Positions 3,096 through 42,300 of a DNA stretch of 64,000 bases are shown one piece after another. The position numbers and the translations under genes are program-made. How positions within the stretch are numbered: position 1 is the first letter of the stretch; every line of letters begins with the position of its first letter. Source of the DNA: Heteronotia binoei (Eukaryota); assembly GCF_032191835.1 (NCBI RefSeq), contig NC_083236.1, positions 46,438,001-46,502,000 on the forward strand, in the 5' to 3' direction. The notes below the pieces were generated by a model. The model worked only from the letters and a program-made list of their open reading frames with translations, searched no databases and was not told the origin of the DNA.

Positions 3096-6000
3096 GTGAG
3101 TCGTGAAGGAGGATCAGGTGTACCTGAGAATGGGAGCTGAAGTAAGGGGATTCCTCTTGATGCCAAAGATATTGTGTCCAGGAGGGTGGAGGTTTGAAGA
3201 TCTCTGTGAAGGGTCTTGAAGTTTCCTAGTTGCAGGGCAAGTTTGGTTCCATGGGAGATGTTCACAGGGACCCATAAACATAAAAATAGTTGCTCCGTTT
3301 CTTTGCAGAATCTGGAAGTGGACTGAAGATTCCCCATCCCCACCCCAAATTCATCCCATAACCTCTTTGAAAGAGGCCTGTTACATGTATGAGAACTTAG
3401 GGGAGTAACCCAAATGAAATATTCTGGAATGCGTTGATATTAAAACAGGGGGGCAGTTACTAAGCAGTGCATCCCAAGGAATTCAGGGATGTTTACTCTT
3501 AATTGGTTACTCCTTAAAAAGCAGGGGAGACCAAGATCAAAAGGTAGGAAATAGGCATGAACTGTCTGCGAGAGCATGACCTAAAGTACAAAGTGCCCGT
3601 TTTTATGTGTGTCTCCAAGTGGGTAGGTTTGGTGGTGGGTACTTGGCTTTTCCTAATTTCCTCCTCAGACTTCCCCCCCCCCCCCATGTTAAATACACAC
3701 TGAATAGCACCCACCATTCCCCTGGGACTTCCTATTCAAGTAGGGCTGTTCTGAAGACAAGCTATGTCCTGTAGCCTTCTTGCTGCCTCAGATGCAGCAG
3801 CCTTTGGTGATAAAACTAAGTTGAATTTAACCTCTTCCTGCCTTCCATTCCTAGTTCATAACAAAGAATCCAGCACTCACTAGGGCTGGGGTGTCAAACA
3901 TGCAGCCTAGGGGCTGAATCAGGCCTCTGGAGGGCTCCTATCAGGCCCCTTAGCAACTGGCTGTCACCTGCTTCCTGCTCCCTCTCTCTTGCTTCCTTCT
4001 GCATAACAACTTGCTTTGCAAGGCTTACTCAATCACACAGGAGCTACAGAGCAAAACCTCTGAGAGCCAGTGATTAAGTGTGTGGACTCTTATCTGGGAG
4101 AACCGGGTTTGATTCCCCACTCTTCCACCTGCACCTGCTGGAATGGCCTTGGGTTAGCCATAACTCTGGCAGAGGTTGTCCTTGAAAGAGCAGCTGATGT
4201 GAGAGCCCTCTCAGCTCACCCACCTCACAGGGTGTCTTTTGTGGGGGAGAAGGTATGAGAGATTGTAAGCCACTCTGAGCCTCTGATTCAGAGAGAAGGA
4301 CGGGGTATAAATCTGCAATTCTTCTCTATTTTCTCCATTGGCTGAGGCTCCTCCCTTGGGAAGGAAGTAGGGGAAGGAATAGCCTGCTTTGCCAGGCTCT
4401 CTTAATTGCACAGCTCAGCTACTGAGCCAAGACACTCTTCCCTCCACTAGCTGAGGCTGCTCCCACTCCTGGGGAAGGAAGGAAAAAGCCAGAGCTTCCT
4501 TTGCCTATTTCCCTGGATCCCATGGGAGAAATACAAAGTAAGCACCTTTAAGACTGAGCACTAATGTTTTAAGGATGTTTTAAGGTTTTTAGAAAAATCT
4601 TTGTGTTTTTCTTTGTTCTTTATAAAGTTTATATCTCTGCTACATAATCATAAATAGGTACACACATGGCTTGTCCCAACCCGACATGGCCTGGCCCGAC
4701 AAGGTCTCATTTATGTCTGATTTGGCCCTCATAACAAATGAGTTCAGCACAACACCCCTGCACTAGAGCATCACTAGTTTCTGCCTTTGATCTCTTTCAG
4801 GACTTGAAGGATGTGGCTGCCAAACACCCAGAAGTTAAAATCATCCTGCTGGGTATGTGCTTCTCTCCCCCAGCACAGATTCTGCAATGACTGGAGCAGA
4901 AGACTCTGGACCATTCTACTTTGGCTGCTTTCACATTTTAGTGTACTTCAGCCATTCAGCAGTCTGCTGCAAGCAGAATTTGTGGTTCTCTAGATCACTC
5001 AGTATAGTCATTTGTAGGTATCCTGTTTGCACATAGTATCCTGTTTTCACATGGGATTCTTATCTCACTACAGATCCTGTCTGCCCCTAAGCATTTTTCC
5101 ACTGCTCCATTCAAGCTGATTACATTTTGCATTGTACCTCTTCATTGTTTACAATAGCTCTCAAACCTTCTGACCGGGATATATAAGGACCCAGGGATCT
5201 CCATTCCTATTTGTATCTGATGAAGGGAGCTTTGACTACACCAGTTTGGTGTAGTGATTAAGTGTTCTTATCTGGAAGAACTGGGTTTGATTCCCCACTC
5301 CTCCACTTGCAGCTGCTGGAATGGCCTTGGTCAGCCATAGCTCTTGTAGGAGTTGTATGAATAATAATAGTTGTATTATTAATACAATTATTGTTGTATT
5401 ACAACTAATATTAGTTGTATTATTGTATTATTAATAGTTGCATTATTCACTGCATGAATAATATTTTTACACATTTTTAATAACTATTCTGCTATGGAAA
5501 ATTTGCAGCATAAAATGACTTTGTCACAGTAGTCATATTTACTAATTTATAAGAAAATCAAGAGAAAAGAAATCCAATAGTTATTACCAATAACTGGCAA
5601 GGAGCTCCAAGATTCACAGAAATCCTAAGGAAGTAATATGTGAGATCCAGGTTTGCTTATAAGGAGATTTTTAATAAAGCATCAAACTTACAGAGAATGC
5701 AGGCTAAGCTTCTATCAACCTGGCCTTGAGTGCCCCCCCCCCCAGCAAAAGTTACCAGAATCCAAGCCCCCATGCTACAGTTGCCAGCCTCCGGAGGGTG
5801 GGGAGACCTGGCAGCAAAGATTTAGAGCATGCGTTGATCCATGTCAGTAACATAATTACTGTGGCTCTGAAAAACACTGAGAAAAGAGGCTGATGAAGTG
5901 TGAGACGGGCGAAACCATGAGTGCTCCTTTCTATACGGTCCCTCCTTTTTCTCTCTATTGCAACATCACAGCGGAACGTTTAAGGACTCCACCCTAAAAC

Positions 6001-9000
6001 ACTTACTTATGGACTTGGTTAAGGCTGGTTCCTATGTAGAAACGTTTAAGTGTATAAATTGGGGGAGTACAAATACCTTATTGTTCCTTTGTTCTTCATT
6101 TTGTCTTATATTTGCACTAAATCAATAGCATGTACACACAATGAGAGTGTGAATATTTATTGTTGACCGGTGATTTGATTATTTTCCCCTGGAGAAAATG
6201 GCTGCTTTGAAGGGTGGGCTCTATGGCATTGTGCCCTGCTGGGGCTCCTCCCCTCCCCAAATCTCATCCTCTCCCAGCTTCACCCCCAAAGTCTTATTAA
6301 AAGTCATTACTAAACTAGGCATATTACATCTTTGGCTACCAGTCAAATAGTCATTAATTATGCTATCCTAAACATTTGGATGAGCCAGGTCATTTCTCAC
6401 CTCAGGTTTCAAATATAAGCTCTGCTAACAATTATGAGAGAGAAAAGTTCCCTTGGGAGTGACTGAACACCATTCTCTCACAAGACTCAGGAAAGCTAAG
6501 CACCAGCATGTAACAAAGATGGAGTCATGCAGGCTGTACACCATCTTGCAACAACTCAGAATTATAAATACAAACAGACATGACAAAGGGAATACCTTTG
6601 AAAATGGTAAGAGCAGTCTAACTTGAAAGATGAATTGAAGAAGGTCTTTTGCTCTAGGCCAGGGGTGACTAAACTGTGCCTCTTTCACAATATTATGTGG
6701 CTCTCAAAGCCCCACCGCCCCATTGGCTGGCTTGAAGAAGACATTTCTCTCTTTAAATCACTTCTCTAAGCCAAGCCAGTAGCTTGGAGAACACATTTAA
6801 AGTTAAAGTTGCTTTCTTTCCACCTCTCCCATCTATTTCCCTCCCTCTTTCCCTTCCTTCCTGCTCTCAGGGATCTGACATGTTGGCTCTCAAACATCTG
6901 ATGTTTATTCTACACGGCTGTTACTTTAAGCAAGTCTGGCCACCTCTGCTGTAGGCTCTAGCCTGGTCAATTGTAAATAAGCGAATAACATGTACAGCTG
7001 CCAGGTCCAATTCAAGAAATATCTGGGGATTTTGAGGGTGGAGCCAGGAGACATGGGGGGTGGAGCCAGGAGCAAGGATGTTGAACTTCAAAGAGAGTTC
7101 TGGCCATCATATTTAAAGGGACAGCACACCTTTTAAACGCCTTCCCTCGGTTGGAAGTAATGAAGGATAGGGACACCTTCTTTTGGGGCTCATAGAATTC
7201 GACTCCTGGCCCAATCTTTTTGAAGCTTGTAGGGTGTTTTGTGGAAAGGCATCGGATGCTGTGCTGCAAATTCGGTGCCTCTATCTCAAAACACAGCCCC
7301 CCCCAGAGCCCTAGATACCCATGGATCAATTCTCCATTATACCCTATGGGAATTGGTCTCTATAGGGAATTATGGAGTGCCCAGCAAATATTCCCCCCTC
7401 TGCTTTCTGAAGCGGGAGGACAGCCTCTAAACCAGGGGAACCCCTGCCCCTAACTGAGGATAGGTAACCCTAATAACATGGTTGAAGGGTCGCACCTCCA
7501 TCGCACCCTGTTGCCTCTTAGCATTTCCCCGAGGGCACTACCACCCAGTTTGGGAATAACATTTTTAAAGCCAACAAATGTTGGAAGCATTCCAGCAGCA
7601 AGAGTGTTTGCTAGTGTGCATTTACTTCATAGGAAGCCACAGCCACAGTTGCATTTCTGAGCAGGTGTGATGTTTATCTGTATATGTAAAACATTTTAAG
7701 AGCAAATAAGCAATGGCAAAGTGTGAAGTGATCCTTAGCTGTCTGTCCTTCAAGATGTAGAGAGGCTAAAGGGAAGAGAATCGCAGGGCTAACTTCTGGC
7801 ACGGTTGGCTCATCTTTTAATTACCTTAAAATGTTTCCATTTTCTGCTGCAGAAGTTACCGATTCTTCCAGCATCCAAGCTGCTGTGGCCAAAGTCACAG
7901 AGCACCTGCAAGGAGCCGGGCTGAATCTGCTCATCAACAATGCTGGGATTATAAGGCTCAGCACTCTGGAATCGGAGACAGGCAAGAACATGTCCGAAGT
8001 GTACAAAACCAACGTGATAGGGCCCATGATGGTAAGCCAGGTAAGGCCATCTGAGGTAAGGCCTTCTTCAAAGAAAATGTCATCTTTCCCAGCTTGGACC
8101 ATTTGGAGGCTTGGTGCCAGTGCTGCCAATGCCGAATTAAACCCTGCGGAAGCCGTTAGGCAGTCAAAATCTCAGGAGCCCCCTCGCATATTATTTGGAG
8201 TGTCCCCACTATCACCTGTGGCCCCCACTGCAGCCTGCAGGCACCTTTTCAAAAGCCCCTTTGACAAAGCCATGGGGAAGAGGCAGACTTGGCGACAACA
8301 CCAGCAGCACCTGCACAAGGCAAGCTGGGCAAAGAGTGGCTAAGTTGCTGGCTGCGTGTGCAGGCTGGGAGGGATGCAAGCAGGGGGGAAACAGGGAAAG
8401 CCGGCCCGGGGCCCCTAAAGGCGTGGGGGTCCATAGGCCAGTGCCTACTTGGCCTAATAGTTAATCCAGCCCTGAGCACTGCCTGGTGATGGGAGTTACA
8501 GGTTGCATTGCTGTCAAAAAGGAGGGACTGCAGCTCAGTGGCAGAGGATCTGCTTTGCATGCAGAGGGTCTCAGGTTCAATCCCTGGCAACAACCGTTGA
8601 AAGGTTCAGGTTGTAGGTAGAGGTGGTGGTGAAAAGTACCATCAAGCCACAGCCAACTTACGGTGACCCTGTAAGATTTTCATGGCAAAATGCAAACAGA
8701 GGTGGTTTGCCATTGACTGCATAGCAACCCTGGACTTCCTTGGTGGTCTCCAATCCAGGGCCTTTTTGGTAGAGAAGGCCCAGCAGGAACTCATTTGGAT
8801 GTTCTGCCACACTCCTTGATGTCGCCACTGTTTCACAGAGATTTTCTGTAGAAAAAGCCCAGCAGCAACTAATTTGCATATTAGGCCATGCCCCCTGATG
8901 CCAAGCCAGCCGGAACTGCGTTCCTGCTATTAAAAAACAAACAAACCCCTGCTCCCATCCAAGTACTAACCAGGACCGACCCTACTTAGCTTCCAAGATC

Positions 9001-12000
9001 TAATGGGATAGGGCTAGCCTGGACCATAGGTATCAGGAAAGGTCTCTACCTGAGACCCTGGAGAGCTGCAGCGCATCTTGGGCAGCTGCTCCGGGTCCTG
9101 GCTGGGAAGGCCCTAACCATCCACAGTCCTGTCCCTCTGACAGAATAAAGAACAAGAAGGCTCCTGCCACAACCTGTCCCCATCCCCTCTGGCACTCAGG
9201 CAGCAGACAGCTCAGCAATCCCCATGTACATTCCCCCCCCACACACACACACATCTTTCACCGGATATGGGCCACCACTTGCTTGAGCCAGGAGTGGCCC
9301 CAGTGCAGGGGGGTACAATTGAGCAAATGGAAATTAATATTTTTAAAAAATTATGTGATTATCCATGACAATGAGTAAGTGTCCAGTCTACCCTATGGAC
9401 CGTGTCTCTGTGCTTGATTGATGTCTTGAGTTGCCAGTTCTGTGTTGGAAAATACCTGGAAATTCAGGGGTGGAGCCTTGAGAGGGAGGGATTTGAGAAG
9501 GGTGTAAGCCAAAATGCCCTCAAAACGAGGTTGGGGAATTGACAGGTGGGCACCTGGCTTAAAAAGGATCTTTTAATCTATATATACAGGATACACGTCC
9601 AGAAATTATTGCTTAAAATTACCAGGGACACTAATTAAGTAAAAACAATTAAAATTTATTCCAGAAAAATATAGACACACATACAAGATAATAAACTCAT
9701 AAAGCATACATACAGTCCTAAGGAAAATAGAGAGAGATTCAGAGACAACACAAGGATGGACAAACAGGGTGATAATTACCGATCGTAGTCTTCAAGGAAG
9801 GCTCCAATGGCGACGAACGAGGACTAGGGGGAGGGGACCCTCAACTGGCCAAGAATCAGGGATGTATCTAGACAGCGGAACTGGGGTACTGCTAGATGCT
9901 CACCTGTGAGATGCACACCTGGGTCACAGGTTATAAAGACTACCTTAAGCCCTTAGGGGATGGGAGGTACAGGGGCGGATGACAGTGGTCAGCTGGTACA
10001 TGACCTCAGAAAAAGGGAAGTCCCTGCAATGACTATAAGGGCTGGACTTACACAGTAGCCAATAGCCAGTTGGCATTCCCTGATTGGATGCTCATAGCTA
10101 GCCAATGAGCAGGCTTGGCCTTAGTTACCTGATTGGACTTCCAGGTAACAATGGGTCAAGGAGGAGGCTCCAGGATAACCATGAAGGGAAAGAATGGAGA
10201 AAATTGTTAAGGTGGGAGGGGGACTTAATTCTATCACACTTATCTAAAAAGACAATAGATGGCCAAATTGCTACCTAGGCAACACCCGGTCTATACAATG
10301 AAACCTGGCTCTGGGTGAAGATGTTCTTCCTGCTCTTCGATCTTCCATTGGCACCAGTCTTTGTCTTGAGTTCCGTTGGACAAAGGCTTAGGTGGTCTGG
10401 CAGGATCCACTCCTTAGATAAGCTTGATGGCTTTATGCATGGGTGACATCTGTTGAGTACGTGAGCCTCTCGCTTCGCTGTTATGAAGTCTGGCACTGCA
10501 GAAAGATGACTGCTGGTGGTGTTAGCCTTCCAAGATGGATTCTCTGGTCAAGGCTGAAAACCGCTTGCCTGGACAGTTTCTGGCGGCACAGCTTCTTCCG
10601 CTCCACGGCCGAGATGGGTATCGCAAGGAGCGACTGGAAACCATCCGTTCTCCTGGTTAGCACTCCTCCAGAGGCACAGAGTGCTGCTGCAACGTTGTGG
10701 CTGTTAGTACTCATAAGTCCCTTCCAGTTTGGTAGACAAAACCCACGTTCTCCTGGCAGATGTGTGTGAGTTGAGCCTCCAGGCACCCTGGCAACCAGAC
10801 AGGTGACTACAATGTTCTGGAAATAGGGGCATTTTTCTCACAAGGGGAAGGACCTCAGCAGGGCCTAATGCCATAGAGTCTGCCCTTCTGAGCAGCCATT
10901 TTCTCCAGGGGAACTGATCTCTGCTAGGTCAATTTTAGGAGCAGGAGATCTTCTGGTCTCTTGGAGGCTGGCAACCCTAAATGTTGTCTCTTTCTCCAGG
11001 CGTTCCTGCCCTTGCTGAGGAAGGCATCTCAGGAAAGTCCCCAGCAAGGGATGAGTTGTAGCAAAGCTGCCATTATCAACATGACCAGCGCATCTGGCTC
11101 CATCACAGATCTCCCTCAATGGCATTTGGGGCAGATCATTAACTATCGTTGCAGTAAGGTATGCTATGGCATTTGGGGTTGGGCTAGAAGACCCTGGAGG
11201 TCCCTTCCAATTCTACGACTCTGTGATTCTCTATAGATTCTCTATTTGTGACGCAAGGGCAACAATCACAAAGTGACTTAAGCCAGTTACTCTCTCACAG
11301 TCTGCCTCACAGGGACATTGTGAGGATACAACGAAAATAGGGGGAATAAAGTATGCTCCCCTGAGCAACTTGGTGGAAGTGAAGACTTACATAGATGTCC
11401 CTTTGATATGCTGATTTACCATGGATCTGGCTGTATCGGTCATTTCTCTCTTTCTGGCATGTTTTCTTTTGAAGCAGTTTGGTGTAATGGTTAAGAGCAT
11501 GGACTCTAATCTGGGAGAACCGGGTTTGATTCCACACTCCTTCACATGTAGCTGCTGGGTGACCTTGGGCAAGCCAGTCAGCGAGCCTGCAGCAAACGTG
11601 GACTATTGCACCCTTCTTAAATCTTCGTTCGCGAAGCCAAGCCGAGAGAGAGAGAGTTCTTGAAGAGCTCTCTCAGCCACACCTACCTCACAGGGTGTCT
11701 GTTGTGGGGTGCGGAAGGAAAGGGGATTGTAAGCTGCTCTAAGACTCCAAGCGAATGGGGGGGTATAAATCCAGTCTCCTCCACCACCTCCTTCTCCTCT
11801 TTTATAGACAGCATTAAATATGCTTACCCGGTGCCAGTCCCTTAGATATGCTGAAGATGAGATCCTATGCATTGCATTGACCCCTGGATGGGTGAAGACA
11901 GACATGGGAGGCATGCAGGTAGGTGATTCCTTGTGAAAACTCATCCCCGGGCTGAGACTGTGTGGTGTAATGGTTAGTGTTGGACTAGGAACTGGGAGAG

Positions 12001-13551
12001 CCAGGTTTGAGTGGCCACTCCACCATGGAAGCTTGCTGGGTGGCCAGTCACACATTCTGAGCCTGGTCTTCCTGCCTCATGGGTGTCTTGTGACAATAAG
12101 ATGGAGAAGGGGAGCATGTTGTAAGCCACTTTGGGTGCCCATACCCGTGTGGGAAAAAGTGGGGTTTAAATGAGATACAAATCTAAATAAGGTTGTAGTA
12201 TAATCATAGAATCATAGAGTTGGAAGGGACCTCCAGGGTCATCTAGTCCTGTGGCTCCCGACCTTTTTGGCACCAGGGACCGGTTTCGTGGAAGACAATT
12301 TTTCCATGGACCGGGGTGGGGGGTGGGGAAAGACTGGGGTTTTTGCCTGCCCCCCCACCTTTCCCCTGCCATCCATGGAGGTCTTTAAATGAGGGGTAGG
12401 CAAAGGTCATTGCTACACTGCCCTTTTCACTGGGACCTGGGTGGATGAAAGAGGTGAAGCTTCGGAGCGAGGTCACGACCCTCACCTACCAGGTCCCGGG
12501 CAGGCAGAAGGGGCAGTGGAGCTGCTCTGCCTCACTCCAAGGCTGCCTCCCCTGCAAGGGGATCATATTTTATAAAATATAATATTTATATTATTTCATT
12601 TAAACCCCATTTTAAACCCAGTGACTGGCATTATAAATCGCTGAAAGTCTTCCTCTCCCAAACCCCACCATCCCCAGGCTCTGCCCTCCCCGAAATCTCC
12701 AGGAATTTCTCAAACCAAAGCTGGCAACCCTAGACTGATATTCCATGGAAATTCACAGTGTTTTTGTTTATTTAGTTAATTTATTTCTTAGCCACCCCTC
12801 CAGAAAACTGCTTGAAGTGGCTAGGAAGGTGTGATGATTCCCACATTTTGTGTGCAGCAGGTGTTCACACCTGCCTCCAGACAAGGAGGATCCACTTAGC
12901 ATTCCAAACCATCAACTGACCTGACAACCTGGACAATGGTGCTGGGGTAGGGTTGTCATCTCTAGGTTGAGGAATACCTGGATATTGGGGGGGAGGGGGA
13001 TAGAGCCTGGGAGGGGGGGGATTGGGAGGAAAGGGGTCGCAGCAGAGTACAGTGCCACAGAGTTCAACCTCTCGAGCAGCCATTTTCTCCAGCAGAACTG
13101 ATCCCTGTGGTCTGGAGACCAGATGTAACAGCAGGAGATCTCCACTCTCCACCTGGAGGTTGGCTGACTTCACTGGGGCCCTGTGGGGCTTGCCTGCTTT
13201 TTGTGCCCTCAGCTTCCCCACCCTCTGGTTTTCTAGGGCTAGGGCTGCTGAGTGGATTGGTGAACCTCTGGAGACTTGGATGGATCAGCTTATGAGAAAT
13301 GTTGGCTTTTGTTATCTGGATGTGGTAAATGAGTGCTGTTATTGACATATTTGGTCAATCATTCTCATTGACCTTTTGTTCACGATGCCAGTTCTCCTTG
13401 CATAACATACCTTTTCCCTCTCTTTTCATTGGTAAAGGCCCCAGTGACAGCAGACACAAGAGTGCGAGTGATTCTGAACACCCTCGGCCGTCTCTCTGAG
13501 AAAGACAATGGTGCTTTTTTGAACTGGGAGGGGATAGTCCTGCCTTGGTGA
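2949..13551 (+). CDS. C-factor/CsgA-like SDR gene 1, join(2949-3095,4801-4852,7853-8040,11000-11158,11808-11918,13438-13551), 256 aa
   Basis: Six GT-AG exons with matching phases (0,1,0,0,0) total 771 nt and are open to TGA. Motifs: TGSNRGIG (Rossmann), CR after beta2, LINNAG, catalytic Ser (NMTS), [15 protein letters not shown]-terminal NWEG..LPW typical of the CsgA/Sniffer SDR clade. Confidence 0.93.
3885..4757. mobile_element. hAT-like non-autonomous element (GGGGTGTCAAAC ends) interrupted by a SINE
   Basis: Ends ggggtgtcaaac ... acacccctg. A reverse-orientation relative lies at ~100-660. Confidence 0.6.
4062..4326 (+). mobile_element. Squam3/Ther1-like CORE SINE
   Basis: tRNA-like head (gagagccag...ggtttgattcccc), cctcacagggtgt core, ggggtataaat...(ctt)n tail. 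Confidence 0.75.
4801..4852 (+). CDS. SDR gene 1 exon 2 (DLKDVAAKHPEVKIILL)
   Basis: tctctttcag acceptor, 52 nt, G|gtatgt donor; same size as the paralogous exons 2. Confidence 0.9.
5879..5953 (+). ncRNA. Candidate type I hammerhead ribozyme (Penelope-type)
   Basis: Core CTGATGA 5890-5896, GAAAC 5911-5915, GTC cleavage triplet 5938-5940. Stem I: gagg/cctc plus gagaaaa/ttttctc around a 2-nt bulge. Stem III: ACC/GGT. Weak stem II. Paired by eye only. Confidence 0.55.
7853..8040 (+). CDS. SDR gene 1 exon 3 (EVTDSSSIQ...LINNAG...GPMMVSQ)
   Basis: 188 nt, ctgcag acceptor, CAG|gtaagg donor, NNAG motif. Confidence 0.93.
9503..10842 (-). mobile_element. Solo LTR (1340 bp) of an LTR retroelement/ERV in SDR gene 1 intron 3
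   Basis: TG...CA ends with imperfect terminal inverted repeats (tgtaagccaaaatgccc / tgtgagaaaaatgcccc) and a 4-bp TSD AGGG (9499-9502, 10843-10846). It splits a TAGGGTTGCCA-type MITE. Minus-strand order is CCAAT boxes (~10060-10140), TATA-like (~9935), AATAAA (9655-9660). Confidence 0.78.
11000..11158 (+). CDS. SDR gene 1 exon 4 (AFLPLLRKAS...INYRCSK)
   Basis: 159 nt, tttctccag acceptor, AAG|gtatgc donor, YxxSK catalytic motif. Confidence 0.93.
11474..11802 (+). mobile_element. Squam3/Ther1-like SINE abutting the SDR gene 1 exon 5 acceptor
   Basis: Family head and tail; the tail ends 5 nt before the exon. Confidence 0.75.
11808..11918 (+). CDS. SDR gene 1 exon 5 (TALNMLTRCQS...[13 protein letters not shown])
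   Basis: 111 nt, ttttatag acceptor, CAG|gtaggt donor. Confidence 0.92.
13438..13551 (+). CDS. SDR gene 1 exon 6 (APVTADT...NWEGIVLPW-stop)
   Basis: 114 nt including TGA, pyrimidine tract then aag acceptor; homologous to the last exons of the paralogues. Confidence 0.9.
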   Translation, partial: APVTADTRVRVILNTLGRLSEKDNGAFLNWEGIVLPW

Positions 13552-25100: not shown

Positions 25101-28100
25101 GCTGGAATGGCCTTGGGTCAGCCATAGCTCTCACAGAGCTGTCCTTGAAAGGGCAGCTTCTGGGAGAGCTGTCTCAGTCCCACCTACCTCACTGGATGTC
25201 TGTTGTGGGCGGTGGGGGAAGTAAAGGAGATTGTAGGCTACTCCGAGACTCTGAGATTTAGAGTATAGGGCAGGGTATAAATCCAATATATTCTTATAGT
25301 GCCCACAGGCAACTATAAGATTTTGGCAACCCATGATTTAAAGCATGAAAACTGATGTCAATTAGTTACAAGGATATTAAGTAACATTAACAGCTTGCTC
25401 TAGATGGAAAGACATGAGAAAAGTGGGTAAATGTTGGTCCAGTTTGGTGTAGTGGTTAAGTGTGCGGACTCTTATCTGGGAGAACCGGGTTTGATTCCCC
25501 ACTCCTCCACTTGCACCTGCTAGCATGGCCTTGGGTCAGCCATAGCTCTGGCAGAGGTTGTCCTTGAAAGGGCAGCTGCTGTGAGAGCCCTCTCCAGCCC
25601 CACCCACCTCACAGGGTGTCTGTTGTGGAGGAGGAAGGTAAAGGAGATTGTGAGCCGCTCTGAGACTCTTCGGAGTGGAGGGCGGGATATAAATCCAATA
25701 TCTTCTTCTTCTTCTTCTTCTCTGTATTGCAATAGATAGAGATGGAAAAGGAAATAAGTAGTCTAGGAATGCCAGCCTCCAGGTGGCACCTGGGGATCCC
25801 CTGGAACGACAGGTCATCTCCAGATTACAGAGATCAGTTCCTCTGGAGAAAATGAATGCTTTGAGAAAGTGAACTCAATGGCACTGTATCTCACGGAGGT
25901 CCCTATCCTCCCCAGGTTTCATCCCCAAATCTCCAGGAGTTTCCCAACCTGGATTTGGTCACCCTACCCACCCAGGGGAGACCTCGCAACCCTAACTGGT
26001 ATTCTGTTTATAGTATGTATCTATCATATATGTATTATACTGGTCTGCAAACCTGTAAGCGTTTCTATGTATTTTGCAATTTAAAAAGAAGAGATGACTA
26101 AAACAGGAAGGGAAACAAACAAAACAAACTAAAATATGCTCATATTCTGCATGCATCCCTACTTGGGAAGAGCTGTCTGGGCCTCCCTGTAGACTGCTGC
26201 ATTGCTGTCCTTGATCCTTCCCTCTCCTTCTCCAGGCATTCCTGCCTTTGCTGAGGAAGGCGTCCCAGAAAAGCCCCCAGAAAGGGATGAGCTGCAGCAA
26301 AGCTGCCATTGTCAACGTCTCCAGTGAAGGAGGTTCCATCACTAATGTCCTCATGTGGGATCTTGGGCATTTCATCAGTTACCGCTGTAGTAAGGTAGGG
26401 ACATGACAGCAGCAGTGGCTCATTATATAGGGCAAGAAGAGTGTAGAAGCCATGAAAAGCTATGTTCAGACCTGTTTACACGACAAATAAATAAAATCTA
26501 TGCCCAGGGAGAACACGAAAGAACGTTGCTTAGATTCTTAAGAAATAGGGTTGCTAGCAACTGGGGCTGAGAGGATCAGGGGGCAAAGACTTATGTGTTT
26601 GACATCATGCTGACCGCTTTGAGTGACCTGAAGTGATGTCATTGTGCTATGGCAGCACTGCAACATTCCCCCAGAACTCTGTGGTTTGACCTGGTGTCCC
26701 TATCAAGTAGACTTGCCAATCCTCAGGTCCCAATGGGGGTTCTCCTGCTTTCCCAGGCTCCTTCCCGCTCTCAGTCAGCTGGCCGGTGGGGGGAAGCCCC
26801 GCCCCCACAGCCACCATGTGCCTTTCCACCTCTGGAGGCTTCAGACTCCACTTGGAAAGGCTTCCTCTTGGGATGATGTGTCTGTGTCTTTAAGGCTGAA
26901 TGGGGGCGGGGAGGGAGCAGGCAGAAGAACATGGCTGCTCCCAGTGGCTGTGAAAGCAGCCCTGACCCTCTTTTGGTGGCACAATCTTTTCAGAGGTCGT
27001 TTGCATAGGAAAGGTAAACTTGAACCTTTGGTTGCTCTGTGTTACTTTGAAAAAGTTGGAAGTTCAGCAACTCGTGAGTAGAGATGCCAATCTCCAGGTG
27101 GGCAAAAAAATCAAAGGTACGGTACATAACCCACCATGAAAACCAGCTTCTTTTATTAAATTATACAAGGTCAACAAAAATAAACAAAAATTCCACCATC
27201 ATAAATTACAAAACAACCATAGCTTTTAGTCCTTAATAGAAAAGGAAGCAATAGCACCAAGAGTCTTTCTTTTCATCCTATGGTAAAACTTCCCATCTTA
27301 TTCCATGCAATCCTGGTGTAGTACTCCAGATGTTTAATGTCTGTCCAAAGATGCAGCCAATAATCCAAGTTTCCAAGGACAAGGTCGTACTGAACCCTTG
27401 TTTCGCGTGAGCTTCTTCAAGCTGCAACAATCCTCTTAGCAATTTCTCTTAAGCGTTAGGCCAAACAGCCAGCATATTTGAAGGTGTTCCTTCAAATGTT
27501 CCTTCAGTACGACCTTGTCCTTGGAAACTTGGCTTATTGGCTGCATCTTTGGACAGACATTAAACATCTGGAGTACTACACCAGGATTGCATGGAATAAG
27601 ATGGGAAGTTTTACCATAGGATGAAAAGAAAGACTCTTGGTGCTATTGCTTCCTTTTCTATTAAGGTCTAAAAGTTATGGTTGTTTTGTAATTTATGATG
27701 GTGGAATTTGTGTTTATTTTTGTTGACCTTGTATAATTGAATAATAGAAGCTGGTTTTCACGGTGGGTTATGCATCTTTGATTTTTTTTTGTCCTTTTGC
27801 CGTGTTACTCTATGTGTGTTGTAGAATCTCCAGGTGGGAGCAGGCCCTCCCCCGCTTCAGAGTCGTCAGAAATGGGGGGGCGGGGGGAGGAGGGAAATGT
27901 CTGCTGGGCACTTCATTATTCCCGATGGAGATTGATTCCCATAGGGTATAATGGAGAATTGATTTGGGGTGCTGCAGCGGCTGTTTCTTGAGGGAGAGGC
28001 ACCACATTTTCAGCATAGCATCTGATGACTTTCCTCAAAATGCTCTCCAAGTTTCAAAACGAGTGGACCAGGGGGTCGAATTCTGTGAGCCCCAAAAGAA

Positions 28101-31100
28101 GGTGCCCCTATCTTTCATTATTTCTAATGTAGGGAAGGCATTTAAAAGGTGTGTGGTTCCTTTAAATGTGATGGCCAGAACTCCCTTTGGAATTCAGTTG
28201 TGCTTGTTACAACTTTGCTTATGGCTCCACCCCCAAAGTCTCCTGGCTCCACCCCCAAAGTCCCCAGATATTTCTTGAATTGGACTTGGCAACCCTAAAG
28301 AAACCTTGAAATATCTTAACATGAGATCCAGTTTGATGTAGTGGTTAAGTGCATGGACTCTTACCTGGGAGAACCGAGTTTGATTCTCCACTCCTCCACT
28401 TGCAGCTGCTGGAATGGCCTTGGGTCAGCCATAGCTCTTGCACAGCTGCCCTTGAAAGGGCAGCTTCTGAGAGAGCTCTTTCAGCCCCACCTACCTCGCA
28501 GAGTGTTTGTTGTGGGGGAGGAAGGTAAAGGAGACTGTAAGCCGCTCTGAGATTCAGATTGAAGAGTGGGGTATAAATCCAATATCTTCTTCGTCTTCTG
28601 TCTAAAACCTCAAATCAAACTGTATTTCCTGGATCAATGATACTCACTCAGTGACTCAGGAGGCACATTTGGCTCTCTGACATGCCACATGTGGTTCTTT
28701 TGACTGCTGTTCCTCAATGTGACCACATTTCAGGGAAGTGTGGAAAGCCCTTGCCAAATGGAGGAGGTGATTGGCAGGTGGTTTCCACCTTGAAACAGCC
28801 AGTGCTGTAGGAATGGATAACCACCAGCGAGCCTAGCTGGAATGTGAGCCTCCTGCCACAGATGGAAATAAATGTGGCTCTTTTGGTTGATGATCAAGGT
28901 GAATGTTGCTGTCTATGAGCTACAGAGTGACTTCCACTGTTCTAGATCTACAAAACATAGCTTTGACTTGCTGCCTTTTCATGGAACTGAATGCTTCTTG
29001 CTTCCTGTTTTCGGCATAGGCTGCTTTGAACATGCTCACGCGGTGCCAGTCACTGGGATATTCAGAAGATGAGATCCTGTGCATTGCATTGCACCCTGGA
29101 TGGGTGCAGACAGACATGGGAAGTTCAGAGGTTGGTGATTCCTGGAGTTAATTTCATCATCACACATTGACAATCCCAGATCAATGTCAATATTGTAGGT
29201 CTACATCCAAATAAGGTTCTGATTATTTTTTGTCTTTTTGTATTTCCAAGATATTTCAGACATCCTCACTGAAAAACTAAGAACTGCCTCTTGAACCAGA
29301 CCACAAATTATCTCTAGTTAAGAACATAACAGAAGCCATGTTGGATCAGGCCAATGGCCCATCCAGTCCAACACTCTGTGCCACAAAGTGGCCAAAAAAC
29401 CCAGGTGCCATCAGGAGGTTCATCTGTGGGGCCAGGACACTAGAAGCCCTCCCACTATGCCCCCCCCCAAACACCAAGAATACAGAGGTGCTTCCATTTT
29501 CCCCCTGAATTCTATGCTGGATTATGACTGGAATTTCAGCAGTTGCCAACTCTGAGTTTGGGAATTCTTGGAGCTTTGTGGATGAAGCCTGTAGAGACTT
29601 TGGAGAGGGGATAGGGTTGCCATTTGCCCGGCGGGGGCAGAGGATCTCCCAATTTTATGGGCTCCCCCACTCCCAAACAAATGGAGAGCCAGTTTGGTGT
29701 AGTGGTTAAGTGTGCGGACTCTTATCTGGGAGAGCCGGGTTTGATTCCCCACTCCTCCATTTGCACCTGCTAGCATGGCCTTGGGTCAGCCATAGCTCTG
29801 GCAGAGGTTGTCCTTGAAAGGGCAGCTGCTGTGAGAGCCCTCTCCAGCCCCACCCACCTCACAGGGTGTCTGTTGTGGGGGAGGAAGGTAAAGGAGATTG
29901 TGAGCCGCTCTGAGACTCTTTGGAGTGGAGGGCGGGATATAAATCCAATATCTTCTTCTTCTTCTAAATGTCCCTGCACAGTGCTGGCAACACACTGACA
30001 TCACTTCCAGAGTGACATCATCACATTGGCAATGTTGGAGCTGATGCTCTACTTTGGGGGCAAAACTCTATGGTTGGACCCATTTTTACCATAGGGTTTT
30101 GCCTCAAAAGTAGACCATTGCCCCAGAGTCACCAATGTGATGACATCTGGAAGTGATGTCAGCACATCACTGATGTCCCTGCCCATCTCTAGAATGCCTC
30201 CCAAATCCCATTGCCAGCAGGAAGAAGACTCCTGGCAACCCAGAGAGGAGAGGGACCTCAGCAGAGTGTAATGCAATAGACCTCCCCTTCCAAAGCAGCC
30301 ATTTTCTCCAGAGTATCTAATCTCTGGCATCTTGAAATGAGCTGTAATTATGGGAGATCTTCAGGCCTCACCTGGTGGCTGGAAACTCTGGCTAAGGATT
30401 CTTCTATTTCTTAGCAGCATTCACTCGCCTACCACCCCAGTAGAAGATGGGAGTAGTGTTGCCAGGTCCGATTCAAGAATTATCTGGGGACTCTGGGGGT
30501 GGAGCCAGGAGACTTTGGGGGTGAAGCAAGGAGCAAGGTTGTGACAAGCATAACTGAACTCCAAAGGAAGTTCTAGCCACCACATTTTCGGGACCGCACA
30601 CCTTGTGAGTGCCAGTTTGGTGTAGTGGTTAAGTGTGCAAACTCTTATCTGGGAGAACCAGGTTTGATTCCCCACTCCTCCACTTGCAGCTGCTGGAATG
30701 GCCTTGGGTCAGCCATAGCACTCACAGGAGTTGTCCTTGAAAGGGGCTCTCTCAGCCCCACCTCCCTCACAGGGTGTCTTTTGTGGGGGGTGGGAGGTAA
30801 AGAATATTGTGACTGTTCTGAGACTCTGAGATCCAGAGTATAGGACAGGATATAAATCCAGTATCTTCTTCTTTTAAATGCCTTCCCTGCATTGGAAATA
30901 ATGAAGGATAGGGGCACCTTCTTGTAGGGCTCATAGAATTGGACTGCCTGGCCCAATCTTTTTGAAACTTGGAGGGTGTTTTGAGGAGAGGCACTGGATA
31001 CTATGTTGCAAATGTGGTGCCTCTACCTCAAAAAACAGCCCCCCCCCAGATCCCCATGGATTAATTCTCCATTATACCCTATGGGAATCAGTCTCCATAG

Positions 31101-36300: not shown

Positions 36301-39300
36301 ACAATAAATAATGCTCTGCAACACAGAGGAAGAAATTCTTCTCACCTTAACCACAAGAATGGGCCCTACGACATTGGTGTTGAACACGGATAGCATTTCT
36401 TCCGGTTGCACAGTTTCTAAGGAGCCATAAGAGTTTACTCCAGCATTGTTGATGAGAACATTCAGGCCTCTGCCATTTAGAAGGGACTCCACCACCGCCA
36501 CAGAAGCCTTCACACTGGTCTGGTCTTCCACCTCTGTTGGGCAGACAGGCAAGCAGATGAGATGGGAATCAGGCAGGAAGTGAAAAGCTCAGTGTGGCAT
36601 AGTGCTCACAGTGCTGACTTTGGATAGCTGCCTATGTAAGAAACCCACGTTCAGCTGACACGTATGTTACAATCTGAATTTTGGTGCAAATGCATTTTCC
36701 TATAAATGGCAAAGTATACATCTAGAGCACGGGTGGCCAAAATGTGGCTAGGGAGCCACGTGTGCCTCTTTCACACATATTATGTGGCTCTTAAAACCAA
36801 CCACCACGTCAGCTGGCTTGAAAAAGGCATTTTTATCTTTAAATCATCTCCAAACCAGCTGGCAGCTTGGAGAATGCATTTAAAGTTGCTTTCTTACCAC
36901 CTCCACCTCCCCCATCTATTTAATTTCTTTCCACCTTCCCTTCCTCCCTTTCTGTCTTGAAGATCTCATTCTATGTGGCTCTTACATTTAGCAAATTTGG
37001 CCACCCCTGATCTAGAGCAAGAGTGTCCAACAGGAACGTTCTGCGCTACCAATAGATCATTGGCTGCTGCAGAGTAGCTCTTACACCTTCTAGAAGATCC
37101 CAGAAAAGATTGTCAAAAGATTTGCTCTAGGATTTTTTGAAAGCTTTTATTTGTTAGGCTTTTTCTCTGTGCTGCTTAACCCATGGCTACATTTCTGGTA
37201 TTCCTCATGTCCTGTTTCCAAGATGGAACAATGCCTGGTAATGTTCTTGGGAGGGGCGACACAACTCAGTGGTAGAGCACCTGCTTGGCATGCAGAAGGT
37301 CCCAGGTTCAATCCCCGGCATCTCTAGTTAAAAGATTTGTTAACATGCACATATCCTCTGTTAGGATATGAAAGCCCTCTGCCTGAGACCCTGGAGAGCT
37401 GCTGTCAATCTGAGTAGATACTGACTTTGATGGACTGATGGTCTGATTCAGTATATGGCTACTTCCAGGGCTTTTTCCCCATATAAAAAAAAGCCCAGCA
37501 GGAACTCATTTGCATATTAGGCCACACACTCAGGGGCTTTTTGAGCAGGAACGCAGTTCCAGCTTGCCTGGCACCAGGGGGTGTGGCCTAATATGCAAAT
37601 GAGTTCCTGTTGGACTTTTTCTACAAAAAAGCCCTGTGTGAAACAATGCTGATGTCAAAGGGCGTGGCCTAATAAGCAAATGAGTTCCTGCTGGACCTTT
37701 TCTACAAAAAAAAGCCCTGCACACCCCATGATGCCAAGTCAGCCGGAACTGCGTTCCTTTGTGTTCCTGCTCAGAAAAAGCCTTGGCTACTTCATGTGTT
37801 CATGCTGAGGGATGAGTAGCTTTGGATATTTTATCATTATACAGATTTAGCTCTCACTAAAGAAAAAGGATGGCAACCCCTGACCTAGAGCCATCAAAGC
37901 CCATTTGTCCTGCAATAGACAGGGTCACATTTTGGACTGTGTCCCTTCTGGAAAACGATGGGAAGCGAGATATTCCATACCTAACTGAACCACATGAATC
38001 CTGGAGTGTTTATCAGCCAGATCACGCAGGGCCTGGAATTGGAGACAAAAAGGTGACTGAGACAAGACTAGTATATCAAATGGACACAAATTACTTGCGA
38101 TTGTTGTAGGACCAAGAAGTTTGCTTGCTCCTGTTCCATGTTATGGCCCTTGGGGGTAGGGTGGCCAGACCGTCCCGGTCTCCCGGGACATTCCCGGATC
38201 TGGCCACCCAATCCCGGATCCCGGGCTGCCTATACCGGGACCATTAAAGGTCCCGGTTTAGGCAGCCCCGGAGCCGGTGGGCCGCGGGCGCGGGCGGGGA
38301 AGGCGGGGAGTGAGGGAGGGAGCGTCCCTGCGCCTGCGCAGGGCCCCTGCGCACGCGCAGGGACGCTCCCACCCTCACTCCCCGCCTTCCCCGCCCGCGC
38401 GCGGGGCCCGGCGGCAGTGGTGGAGGCCTCTCCATGGCCTCCGCTGGTCGCTGGAAGCTCTCCAGAGACTCTGGAGGGCCTCCAGCGACCAGCGGAGGCC
38501 GCGGAGAGGCCGCGGGGCACCCGGCGCTGGTCCCGGAAGGCCTTCCAGAGCCTCTGGAAGGCCTTCGGGGACCAGCGCCGGCCAGCGAAGGCTTCCCCGC
38601 GGCCTCCGCTGGTCCCTGGAGGCCCTCCAGAGTCTCTGGAGGGCCTCCAGGGACCAGCGGAGGCCGCGGGGAAGCCGCGGGGCACCCGGCGCTGGTCCCG
38701 GAAGGCCTTCCAGAGGCTCTGGAAGGCCTTCCGGGACCAGCGCCGGCCAGCGAAGGCTTCCCCGCGGCCTCCGCTGGTCCGTGGAGGCCCTCCAGAGTCT
38801 CTGGAGGGCCTCCAGGGACCAGCGGAGGCCGCGGGGAAGCCGCGGGGCACCCGGCGCTGGTCCCGGAAGGCCTTCCAGAGCCTCTGGAAGGCCTTCAGGG
38901 ACCAGCGCCGGCCAGCGAAGGCTTCCCCGCGGCCTCCGCTGGTCCCTGGAGGCCCTCCAGAGTCTCTGGAGGGCCTCCAGGGACCAGCGGAGGCCGCGGG
39001 GAAGCCGCGGGGCACCCGGCGCTGGTCCCGGAAGGCCTTCCAGAGGCTCTGGAAGGCCTTCCGGGACCAGCGCCGGCCAGCGAAGGCTTCCCCGCAGCCT
39101 CCGCTGGTCCCTGGAGGCCCTCCAGAGTCTCTGGAGGGCCTCCAGGGACCAGCGGAGGCCGCGGGGAAGCCGCGGGGCACCCGGCGCTGGTCCCGGAAGG
39201 CCTTCCAGAGCCTCTGGAAGGCCTTCCGGGACCAGCGCCGGCCAGCGAAGGCTTCCCCGCGGCCTCCGCTGGTCCCTGGAGGCCCTCCAGAGTCTCTGGA

Positions 39301-42300
39301 GGGCCTCCAGGGACCAGCGGAGGCCGCAGGGAAGCCGCGGAGCAGCCGGCGCTGGTCCCTGGAGGCCTCCAGAGGCCAGCGCCGGTAGCGGAGAGGCCCG
39401 GCGCTGGTCCCTGGAGGCCTCCAGAGGCCAGCCCCGGCAGCTCCCTCCCTCCCTCGTCGCGAGGGCCGCCGCCGCCGCTGGATCCGCCGCCCTGGAATAA
39501 GGTAAGGGGGCCGAAAGCGGGGGGGGGGCGGGGGGNNNNNNNNNNNNNNNNNNNNNNNNNNNNNNNNNNNNNNNNNNNNNNNNNNNNNNNNNNNNNNNNN
39601 NNNNNNNNNNNNNNNNNNNNNNNNNNNNNNNNNNNNNNNNNNNNNNNNNNNNNNNNNNNNNNNNNNNNNNNNNNNNNNNNNNNNNNNNNNNNNNNNNNNN
39701 NNNNNNNNNNNNNNNNNNNNNNNNNNNNNNNNNNNNNNNNNNNNNNNNNNNNNNNNNNNNNNNNNNNNNNNNNNNNNNNNNNNNNNNNNNNNNNNNNNNN
39801 NNNNNNNNNNNNNNNNNNNNNNNNNNNNNNNNNNNNNNNNNNNNNNNNNNNNNNNNNNNNNNNNNNNNNNNNNNNNNNNNNNNNNNNNNNNNNNNNNNNN
39901 NNNNNNNNNNNNNNNNNNNNNNNNNNNNNNNNNNNNNNNNNNNNNNNNNNNNNNNNNNNNNNNNNNNNNNNNNNNNNNNNNNNNNNNNNNNNNNNNNNNN
40001 NNNNNNNNNNNNNNNNNNNNNNNNNNNNNNNNNNNNNNNNNNNNNNNNNNNNNNNNNNNNNNNNNNNTGCAGAGTGTTGGACTGGATGGGCCACTGGCCT
40101 GATCCAACAGGGCTTCTCTTATGTTCTTATGTGACGCAGAGTGTTGGACTGGATGGGCCACTGGCCTGATCCAACAGGGCTTCTCTTATGTTCTTATGTG
40201 ATGCAGAGTGTTGGACTGGATGGGCCACTGGCCTGATCCAACAGGGCTTCTCTTATGTTCTTATGTGACGCAGAGTGTTGGACTGGATGGGCCACTGGCC
40301 TGATCCAACAGGGCTTCTCTTATGTTCTTATGTGACGCAGAGTGTTGGACTGGATGGGCCACTGGCCTGATCCAACAGGGCTTCTCTTATGTTGTTATGT
40401 GATGCAGAGTGTTGGACTGGATGGGCCACTGGCCTGATCCAACAGGGCTTCTCTTATGTTGTTATGTGACGCAGAGTGTTGGACTGGATGGGCCACTGGC
40501 CTGATCCAACAGGGCTTCTCTTATGTTGTTATGTGATGCAGAGTGTTGGACTGGATGGGCCACTGGCCTGATCCAACAGGGCTTCTCTTATGTTGTTATG
40601 TGATGCAGAGTGTTGGACTGGATGGGCCACTGGCCTGATCCAACAGGGCTTCTCTTATGTTATTATGTGACGCAGAGTGTTGGACTGGAGGGGCCACTGG
40701 CCTGATCCAACAGGGCTTCTCTTATGTGACAATACTGACTTTGGTGGACCCAAGCACTGATTCAGTGTAAGGGAGCTTTGTGTTTGTGTCTTCTAGTGCA
40801 ATTTTGTTCTCAGATCCTGTATTTACTTCATCAGTATATGGGATAAGGCACTTTCTCAACTGTGCTGCATAATGCAGCCTATTTATTTTGTCCTGTTGGC
40901 TCTATCTGCGCCACCTTCATCACTTTCGGGGTGTGGATCCCCCAGTGGAGTGGTCTCCCGACTCCCTCCGCCGGCTGTTTCTGATAGCCCTGCGCCCCCT
41001 CTTTCATTTGATATGTGTCCCGTGCGGGTGCCACCCTCCCGCCGGGAGATGCCGCAAAATGAGCCCCCTTGAGGCTTATGGCGGCAGGGCTCGGGGGAAG
41101 CGAGCTAGACTGCTGTTCTTTTGAGGGGTTATAGAGTGTTTCGAGCCCGTCCCTGTGGCATCGGTCCCATCATTGTGGGGCCCAGGGGGCCGGCGCAGCG
41201 GCACGCTGAAGCAGCCTGTCGGTCACTTCCAGGTTCCTGTCCTGCATCTTGACCGGTGTTATTAGTGACAGGCTGCTTCGGCGTGCCGCTGCGCCGGCCC
41301 CCTTGGTCCCACAACGATGGGACCGATGCCACAGGGACGGGCTCGAAACACTCTATAACCCCTCAAAAGAACAGCAGTCTAGCTCGCTTCCCCCGAGCCC
41401 TGCCGCCATAAGCCTCAAGGGGGCTCATTTTGCGGCATCTCCCGGCGGGAGGGTGGCACCCGCACGGGACACATATCAAATGAAAGAGGGGGCGCAGGGC
41501 TATCAGAAACAGTCAGCGGAGGGAGTCGGGAGACCACCCCACTGGGGGATCCACACCCCGAAAGTGATGAAGGTGGCGCAGATAGAGCCAACAGAGCCAA
41601 CAGGACAAAATAAATAGGCTGCATTATGCAGCACAGTTGAGAAAGTGCCTTATCCCATATACTGATGAAGTATATACAGGATTTGAGAACAAAATTGTTT
41701 CCGGCGGTGATATTTGGGGGATTTTTGGGGACGTCACAGGAAGTGCTGTGAAGTCACTTCCTGTTTCCGGCAGGTGACGCGGGGGAAATGATGTCACAGG
41801 AAGTGATGCCACTTCCTGTTTCCGGTGGTGGCATGACATCACCGGAAGTGACGTCACCGGAAGTGACGTCACTTCCTGTTTCCGGCGGCGCGCGCGCTTT
41901 GCGCGCGCACACCCCCCCCCCCCCACCCACCCCCCAGTGTCCCTGGCTGGCCTTCAGACATTATGGTCACCCTACTTGGGGGACTGTATTCCCAAAAGCA
42001 AAAACGTCAGGTTGGGTTTTTTTTAATTTCATATTGTTTAATGTAGTAATTGCCCTGACCTGGATGTCCCAGTCTCATCAGACAAGGGTAGCCCAATCTC
42101 ATCAGACCTCAGAAGCTAAGTAGAGTCAGCTCTGGTTTGTATTTGGATGAGAGACAACCAAGGAAGACCAGGGTCACTATGCAGAGGCAGGCAATGGCAA
42201 ACCACCTCTGAATGCCCCTTGCCTTGAAAAAAGGGTTACCATAAGTCAGCTGTGACTTGGCAGCACTTTTCCACCATCAATGTAATTAGGTGGCCATCAG

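What the first reader, a model, noticed from the sequence alone, without database searches (positions are those of the whole stretch)
5879..5953. Hammerhead-ribozyme fold on the sense strand of SDR gene 1 intron 2
Seen: gagaaaagagg-CUGAUGA-A-GUGUG aga CGGGC-GAAAC-C-(20 nt)-G-GUC-ccuc(cu)uuuucuc. The complete catalytic core and a GUC triplet are present. Stem I is 4+7 bp, stem III is 3 bp, and stem II forms 4 of 5 pairs. The stem III loop holds a self-complementary octamer GAGUGCUC (5919-5926). Established: Penelope-like elements carry minimal type I hammerheads that work as dimers through palindromic stem III. Inference: it could cut the host pre-mRNA after C5940 during transcription and so affect splicing or expression of gene 1.
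Basis: partly seen in the sequence, partly recalled or inferred. Interest (0 to 1): 0.75.

Follow-up and report, generated by a model that had tools for sequence, protein, structure and literature searches.

The report
Hammerhead-like relic inside a gecko repeat
The hammerhead-ribozyme letters are really there, but they ride on a 375-base mobile-element fragment that landed in this gecko intron, two of the three helices are too weak to fold, and nothing suggests that it cuts the host gene's RNA, so the find is ordinary.

Summary
The string at 5879-5953 (+) is as described: complete hammerhead core, C17 at 5940, an 11-pair helix I with a CU bulge. It lies on the sense strand of intron 2 of a C-signal-like SDR gene of Heteronotia binoei. 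Helix II has only two G-C pairs, two G.U and a G/G mismatch (0.0 kcal/mol alone). Helix III is 3 bp, an A.C mismatch, then 2 bp. The hammerhead fold is 11-13 kcal/mol worse than the predicted fold.

The motif is not host intron sequence. It sits in a 375-bp insert (5809-6183) that interrupts a MITE copy. The whole block is absent from the orthologous Gekko japonicus intron. About 92-94% identical sister copies appear in RNA contigs.

A fitted descriptor hits 0.006 times per 64-kb window by chance, which means hundreds per genome. Rfam finds no hammerhead, but it also misses a textbook Penelope-type hammerhead in Gekko, so that negative carries no weight.

Best reading (about 0.55): a relic or atypical hammerhead-type motif carried by a retroelement tail, probably Penelope-like and inactive here. 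Chance look-alike: about 0.33. Active cutter of the host pre-mRNA: about 0.06.

The scan has already reported many Penelope hammerheads elsewhere in this genome.

The parts
5879..5953 (+). Hammerhead-like type I motif. Helix I 5879-5889 / 5941-5953; core CUGAUGA 5890-5896; unpaired A 5897; helix II 5898-5910; GAAA 5911-5914; helix III 5914-5919 / 5934-5939; C17 5940.
   Evidence: Sequence read. It is the only hit of the descriptor in the window. Hammerhead fold -7.2 to -8.8 kcal/mol against an MFE of -20.3.
5809..6183 (+). 375-bp foreign insert that carries the motif, read as a fragment of a low-copy mobile element, probably a retroelement tail. Orientation is inferred from its T-rich end.
   Evidence: It interrupts a MITE copy: left-end-to-right-tag spacing is 409 nt against 67-75 nt in seven intact copies. 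RNA contigs about 91-94% identical match only 5802-6121 and 5974-6187 and then run on unlike sequence, whereas the true orthologous intron contig is 98.5% identical. No counterpart in the Gekko intron.
5771..5808 (+). Left end of the interrupted MITE copy, up to the first CCTGG tag.
   Evidence: Alignment A2 with six other copies in the window.
6184..6293 (+). Right part of the same MITE copy, starting at the second tag (TTCCCCTGGAGAAAATGG).
   Evidence: BLAST to other copies, alignment A2, tag scan.
4798..4848 (+). Exon 2 of the C-signal-like SDR gene (approximate ends).
   Evidence: tblastn with P0001.
7852..8041 (+). Exon 3 of the same gene.
   Evidence: tblastn; adh_short match at 8.9e-10; spliced RNA contigs end at 7852 and 8041.

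Best explanation
The motif is a passenger. A fragment of a retroelement landed inside a MITE copy in intron 2 of the SDR gene in the Heteronotia lineage. The fragment is most likely the 3' tail of a Penelope-like element, whose terminal repeats normally carry a small type I hammerhead. It brought a hammerhead-type motif with it.

In this copy the catalytic core letters are intact. Helix II is almost absent and helix III is interrupted, so the RNA is predicted to fold differently. The motif is most likely transcribed as part of the intron, spliced out and degraded without cutting anything.

Shown: the motif, the nested insertion, its absence from the Gekko orthologue, the existence of sister copies, and the weak helices. 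Inferred: the Penelope class of the insert, descent of the motif from a working ribozyme, and its inactivity.
For: - Motif and core are present.
- An unpaired base between A9 and G10.1, a G10.1-C11.1 pair and a short 4-bp helix I with a closing stem are traits listed for Penelope hammerheads (PMC4209133).
- The insert at 5809-6183 replaces about 41-45 nt of a MITE between two CCTGGAGA tags.
- Window 5776-6332 has no counterpart in the colinear Gekko japonicus intron.
- Sister copies at about 91-94% identity stop at the insert's borders. They carry G at 5917, which would pair with C5936 and give a 6-bp helix III.
- Exact core plus C17 is expected by chance only 0.0004 times per window.
- Earlier scan notes say Penelope elements are very abundant in this gecko, that one family lands at a fixed spot in a MITE, and that one carries a hammerhead with an almost absent helix II (leads only).
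- Inactivity: helix II hairpin 0.0 kcal/mol, pair probabilities of helices II and III about 0, hammerhead fold 11-13 kcal/mol above the MFE. No partner copy for a dimer was found in the window plus 77 kb more of this genome.
Against: - The insert has no reverse transcriptase or GIY-YIG remnant.
- It has no significant similarity to the Penelope-like insert at 27103-27824 (score equals the shuffle mean) or to the Gekko element.
- Only the last 12 nt resemble that element's end (p about 0.05-0.1).
- Helix II (expected 6-8 bp) and helix III (expected minimal and palindromic) do not fit the metazoan Penelope pattern.
- No compensatory change is seen in the sister copies, and two of their changes weaken helix II further.
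- The list of differences from the reads tool is truncated, so an intact core in the sister copies is not proven.
- Chance hits are expected somewhere in a genome this size.
Confidence: 0.55

Rival explanations
1. Chance look-alike. The core words and short complementary runs arose by accident in repeat-derived intron sequence, helped by a purine tract facing a pyrimidine tract that makes helix I. No ribozyme was ever there.
For: - The fitted descriptor gives 0.006 type-I hits and 0.026 hits of any topology per window, so hundreds are expected per genome and about 5-20 in the 757 windows already read here.
- The z-score of the fold is -0.89.
- Helices II and III are marginal.
- There is no family resemblance to known gecko Penelope hammerheads.
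- No covariation is seen.
Against: - With exact CUGAUGA and C17 the rate falls to 0.0004 per window, and the 7-bp closing stem lowers it further.
- The extra base after A9 and the G10.1-C11.1 pair match the Penelope pattern.
- It sits in a mobile insert in a genome rich in such elements.
Confidence: 0.33
2. Active intronic ribozyme. The RNA self-cleaves after C5940, alone or as a dimer, during transcription, and so lowers or redirects expression of the SDR gene.
For: - The core is complete and on the sense strand, with a long helix I.
- Conserved intronic type I hammerheads exist in amniotes (PMC6155905).
- An extra base after A9 is tolerated in natural hammerheads (cited in PMC4209133).
Against: - The motif is absent from the orthologous Gekko intron.
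- Helix II is nearly absent, and the competing fold is 11-13 kcal/mol better.
- There is no partner copy, and the octamer is off-centre and not conserved.
- Even well-formed Penelope hammerheads cleave poorly in vitro, and not at all as monomers (PMC4209133).
- RNA contigs of sister copies run uncut through the site, which is weak evidence.
Confidence: 0.06
3. Unit of a retrozyme-like non-autonomous element that makes small circular RNAs through its hammerhead.
For: The unit size of about 375-385 nt and a type I motif with a longer helix III resemble animal retrozymes (PMC7229834 abstract). The insert region is deeper in RNA contigs than the neighbouring unique intron.
Against: - There is a single copy with no tandem repeat in the window or in 77 kb more.
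- No back-joined contig piece was reported.
- Helix II is weak.
Confidence: 0.04

Closest known systems
Minimal hammerheads of Penelope-like retroelements (Cervera and de la Pena 2014, PMC4209133)
   Same: Type I topology, a short 4-bp helix I followed by a loop and a closing stem, an unpaired base between A9 and G10.1, a G10.1-C11.1 pair, carriage on a mobile insert, and likely negligible activity as a monomer.
   Different: Helix II is 5 positions with only two G-C pairs, instead of 6-8 bp. Helix III is a 26-nt domain instead of a minimal palindrome. No Penelope coding remnant or sequence similarity was found. A real gecko example (L001:1775-1816) is 42 nt with an ACGCGU palindrome.
Conserved intronic hammerheads of amniotes (RECK, CTCL, DTNB introns; PMC6155905)
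   Same: Type I motif on the sense strand of an intron of a protein-coding gene.
   Different: Those are conserved across amniote groups and have stable helices and loop-loop contacts. This one is lineage-specific, absent from the Gekko orthologue, and matches no Rfam hammerhead family.
Animal retrozymes (Cervera and de la Pena 2020, PMC7229834)
   Same: Type I hammerhead in a non-coding unit of a few hundred bases.
   Different: Retrozymes occur as tandem repeats that give circular RNAs. Here there is one isolated copy.

Membership tests
Hammerhead ribozyme (general) | Conserved core: C3 U4 G5 A6 N7 G8 A9, G12 A13 A14, A15.1-U16.1, H17 | tested here: met
   CUGAUGA 5890-5896, GAAA 5911-5914, U5939, C5940.
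Hammerhead ribozyme (general) | Three helices around the core | tested here: inconclusive
   Helix I is good, with pair probability 0.7-0.8. Helix II has two G-C, two G.U and one G/G, and is 0.0 kcal/mol alone. Helix III is 3 bp, an A.C mismatch and 2 bp. Pair probabilities of helices II and III are about 0.
Hammerhead ribozyme (general) | Match to a curated Rfam hammerhead model | tested here: inconclusive
   No hammerhead family at E<=10 on 271 nt. The same search also misses a textbook Penelope hammerhead in Gekko, so the test has no power for this class.
Hammerhead ribozyme (general) | Self-cleavage 3' of H17 | not testable with these tools
   Only assembled contigs were on hand, with no raw reads, so RNA ends cannot be seen.
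Penelope-like element minimal hammerhead | Unpaired base between A9 and G10.1, and a G10.1-C11.1 pair | tested here: met
   A5897; G5898-C5910. The criterion is from PMC4209133.
Penelope-like element minimal hammerhead | Long helix II (6-8 bp) | tested here: not met
   Five positions, two Watson-Crick pairs. Sister copies are weaker still, with 5906 C>T and 5909 G>T.
Penelope-like element minimal hammerhead | Minimal or small palindromic helix III that allows a dimer | tested here: not met
   The helix III domain is 26 nt. The octamer at 5919-5926 is off-centre, needs two G.U pairs, and is lost in sister copies through 5922 T>G. The predicted dimer is not a double hammerhead.
Penelope-like element minimal hammerhead | Location in the terminal repeat of a Penelope-like element | tested here: inconclusive
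   It lies in a nested 375-bp insert with sister copies. There is no coding remnant and no similarity to the window's Penelope-like insert. Only a 12-nt end resemblance was found.
Conserved amniote intronic hammerhead | Conservation at the orthologous intron position in other species | tested here: not met
   Gekko japonicus intron 2 aligns on both sides but lacks window 5776-6332.
Animal retrozyme | Tandem repeats, each with a hammerhead | tested here: not met
   No second copy in the window or in L003-L005.

The most novel reading that the evidence does not exclude
The insert belongs to an undescribed gecko retroelement family. Its hammerhead variant would have an almost absent helix II and a long helix III, would still cleave in vivo, and this sense-strand intronic copy would trim SDR pre-mRNA.
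Probability: 0.05. Interest if true: 0.6.

Novelty: new member of a known kind. Interest (0 to 1): 0.2.

Why it matters
It matters little for the host gene. The motif is a lineage-specific passenger that most likely does nothing.

The practical lessons are for the scan:
- Hammerhead-like strings in this gecko should first be checked for sitting in a repeat insert.
- Rfam's hammerhead models do not see Penelope-type minimal hammerheads, so a blank there cannot dismiss them.
- Read contigs that look like orthologues may be sister copies of a repeat.

If the family turned out to keep a hammerhead with almost no helix II, that would be of some interest for how little structure the ribozyme needs.

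Tried and rejected
- Rfam at gathering score on the whole window and at E<=10 on 271 nt found no hammerhead. I set this aside as evidence after the Gekko control also failed.
- I first read the 92% identical RNA contigs as orthologues showing neutral drift. I rejected that because the true orthologous intron contig is 98.5% identical and these contigs stop at the insert's borders.
- An 8-bp direct repeat AAAACACT flanking 5879-5995 looked like a target-site duplication. I rejected it: about 3 such repeats are expected by chance in 600 nt, and it is not kept in sister copies.
- A second copy or partner was sought by self-BLAST, a minimal-hammerhead descriptor, a three-topology descriptor and a relaxed scan that includes the U3-A8 core. 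Only the candidate turned up in H. binoei DNA.
- Similarity to the Penelope-like insert at 27103-27824 was not significant.
- An exact-pattern scan of metagenome contigs gave no hit.
- Earlier findings by sequence and by long word lists came back blank.
- The Eublepharis protein P0006 is not on record as a gene. The Paroedura locus L002 gave no alignable intron.
Exon 3 alone was searched by reference, inside its open reading frame.

Full report
**What is in the sequence**

- Helix I is an 11-nt purine run (5879-5889) that pairs with 5941-5944 and, after a CU bulge, with 5947-5953.
- CUGAUGA is at 5890-5896, followed by an extra A at 5897.
- Helix II is GUGUG / AGA / CGGGC at 5898-5910.
- GAAA is at 5911-5914.
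- Helix III is ACC ... GGU around a 20-nt loop.
- C17 is 5940.

Three details need correcting.
- Helix II has only two Watson-Crick pairs, plus two G.U and a G/G mismatch.
- The octamer at 5919-5926 is self-complementary only through two central G.U pairs, and it is off-centre in the loop.
- Helix III can continue past an A5917.C5936 mismatch with two more pairs.

**Gene context**

Exon 3, searched alone by reference inside its open reading frame, is 100% identical to a 256-aa C-signal-like short-chain dehydrogenase of Heteronotia binoei (P0001). tblastn with P0001 places its six exons on the + strand. Exon 2 is at about 4798-4848 and exon 3 at 7852-8041. Pfam adh_short matches are colinear with this model. 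The motif is therefore in intron 2, on the sense strand, as stated. From the locus coordinates the window is CM063338.1 at about 46,438,001-46,502,000.

**Is it more than chance?**

A descriptor fitted to the candidate finds only this site in the window. In 4792 simulated 64-kb windows (order-3 Markov, both strands) it hits:
- 0.0063 times per window as type I;
- 0.026 times per window in any topology;
- 0.0004 times per window with exact CUGAUGA and C17.

So it is uncommon per window. Even so, tens to hundreds of such strings are expected in a gecko-sized genome, and several in the 757 windows of this genome already read.

**Models and folding**

Rfam reports no hammerhead family at gathering score or at E<=10 on a 271-nt stretch. 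I tested this against a control. The Gekko japonicus locus fetched for comparison holds a textbook Penelope-type minimal hammerhead at L001:1775-1816. It has a 6-bp helix I, CUGAAGA, an unpaired A, a 4-bp helix II, an ACGCGU palindrome and C17. Rfam misses that one too. The Rfam blank therefore says nothing about this class.

| Measure | Value |
|---|---|
| Hammerhead fold energy | -7.2 to -8.8 kcal/mol |
| MFE fold energy | -20.3 kcal/mol |
| Pair probability, helices II and III | about 0 |
| Helix II hairpin alone | 0.0 kcal/mol |
| Gekko control helix II alone | -1.7 kcal/mol |
| Fold z-score against shuffles | -0.89 |

The MFE fold pairs 5898-5911 with 5922-5936. The control is not cleanly predicted as a hammerhead either, so energy alone is not decisive. 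The gap for the candidate is nevertheless large.

**Where the motif sits**

This was the informative step. The G. japonicus orthologue (L001) aligns colinearly with intron 2 up to window 5775 and again from about 6333. It has nothing like 5776-6332, and holds what looks like a SINE there instead.

Within that block, 5771-5808 and 6184-6293 are the two parts of one copy of a common MITE (alignment A2). Seven intact copies have 67-75 nt between the left end and a right-hand tag. This copy has 409 nt. So a 375-bp foreign piece (5809-6183) replaces about 41-45 nt of the MITE, between two CCTGGAGA tags.

Contigs from RNA libraries match 5802-6121 and 5974-6187 at about 91-94% identity and then run on unlike sequence. 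In the same run, the contig over the neighbouring unique intron is 98.5% identical. Those contigs are therefore sister copies of a repeat and not orthologues. No further copy lies in the window or in 77 kb more of the same chromosome.

**What the sister copies say**

The listed differences inside the motif are:
- 5879 G>A, which loses the end pair of helix I;
- 5906 C>T, which turns a G-C into G.U in helix II;
- 5909 G>T, which breaks a helix II pair;
- 5917 A>G, which would pair with C5936 and give a 6-bp helix III;
- 5922 T>G, which destroys the octamer's self-complementarity.

No listed difference hits a core letter. The list is truncated, though, so an intact core in those copies is not proven. 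No change is compensatory.

**Class of the insert**

Cervera and de la Pena 2014 (PMC4209133) describe Penelope-element hammerheads with these traits:
- type I topology with a short helix I;
- a conserved unpaired base between A9 and G10.1;
- a conserved G10.1-C11.1 pair;
- a long helix II;
- a minimal palindromic helix III;
- poor cleavage in vitro, and none as monomers.

The candidate shows the topology, the short helix I, the unpaired base and the G10.1-C11.1 pair. It fails on the long helix II and the minimal palindromic helix III. Cleavage could not be tested here.

Earlier notes of this scan are unchecked leads. They say such elements are very abundant in this gecko, that one family lands between two tags in a MITE, and that one old family has a hammerhead with an almost absent second helix. 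The placement between two tags is what I see here.

Against the Penelope class:
- The insert has no coding remnant.
- It is not similar to the Penelope-like fold-back insert at 27103-27824.
- It shares only a 12-nt end motif with that insert (p about 0.05-0.1).

**Verdict**

The most likely reading (0.55) is a hammerhead-type relic carried by a retroelement fragment, probably Penelope-like, that is inactive in this copy and irrelevant to the host gene. A pure chance look-alike remains a serious rival (0.33). An active ribozyme that cuts the SDR pre-mRNA is unlikely (0.06), and a retrozyme unit less likely still (0.04).

The kind is known, and the scan has already found many examples in this genome. 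Interest is low.

Noticed in passing
L001:1775-1816 (Gekko japonicus, upstream of the orthologous SDR gene): A textbook Penelope-type minimal hammerhead: 6-bp helix I, CUGAAGA, unpaired A, 4-bp helix II with a CGUG loop, ACGCGU palindrome, C17. Rfam does not report it at E<=10, which shows a blind spot of the curated models.
   Followed up: partly
window 5771-6293, and copies at 10843-10975, 13007-13167, 25768-25924, 30233-30400, 47639-47793: A common MITE family with a fixed spacing of 67-75 nt between its left end and a CTGGAGAAAATGG tag. The insert at 5809-6183 replaces the stretch between two CCTGGAGA tags, the kind of landing spot an earlier scan note ascribes to a Penelope family.
   Followed up: partly
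window 27089-27838: A fold-back Penelope-like insert (arms 27107-27394 and 27503-27790, 95% complementary). It is flanked by a 14-nt direct repeat AATCTCCAGGTGGG at 27089-27102 and 27825-27838, inside the end of another MITE. Its hammerhead region looks decayed (CUUGAAGA in place of CUGAAGA), and Rfam finds nothing there.
   Followed up: partly
window 2949-44000: A tandem array of C-signal-like SDR genes. The first two genes lie on the + strand (from 2949 and 15976), and further exon matches follow on the + strand up to about 31.5 kb. Weaker exon matches lie on the - strand between about 33.2 and 43.9 kb. Gekko, Paroedura and Eublepharis also have many paralogues.
   Followed up: no
window 8529-8589 and 37255-37326: Rfam tRNA hits just above the gathering score. 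They were not compared with the SINE copies listed and may be tRNA-derived repeat heads, not tRNA genes.
   Followed up: no
window 38424-39383 and 40001-40836: Two satellite arrays (165-nt and 67-nt units) on either side of an N gap at 39536-40067, next to a 328-nt inverted repeat at 40893-41594.
   Followed up: no
L001:6465-6793: At the place where Heteronotia has the MITE plus insert, Gekko japonicus carries an unrelated sequence of about 330 bp that looks like a tRNA-derived SINE. The same intron spot was hit independently in both lineages, or one of them lost sequence there.
   Followed up: no
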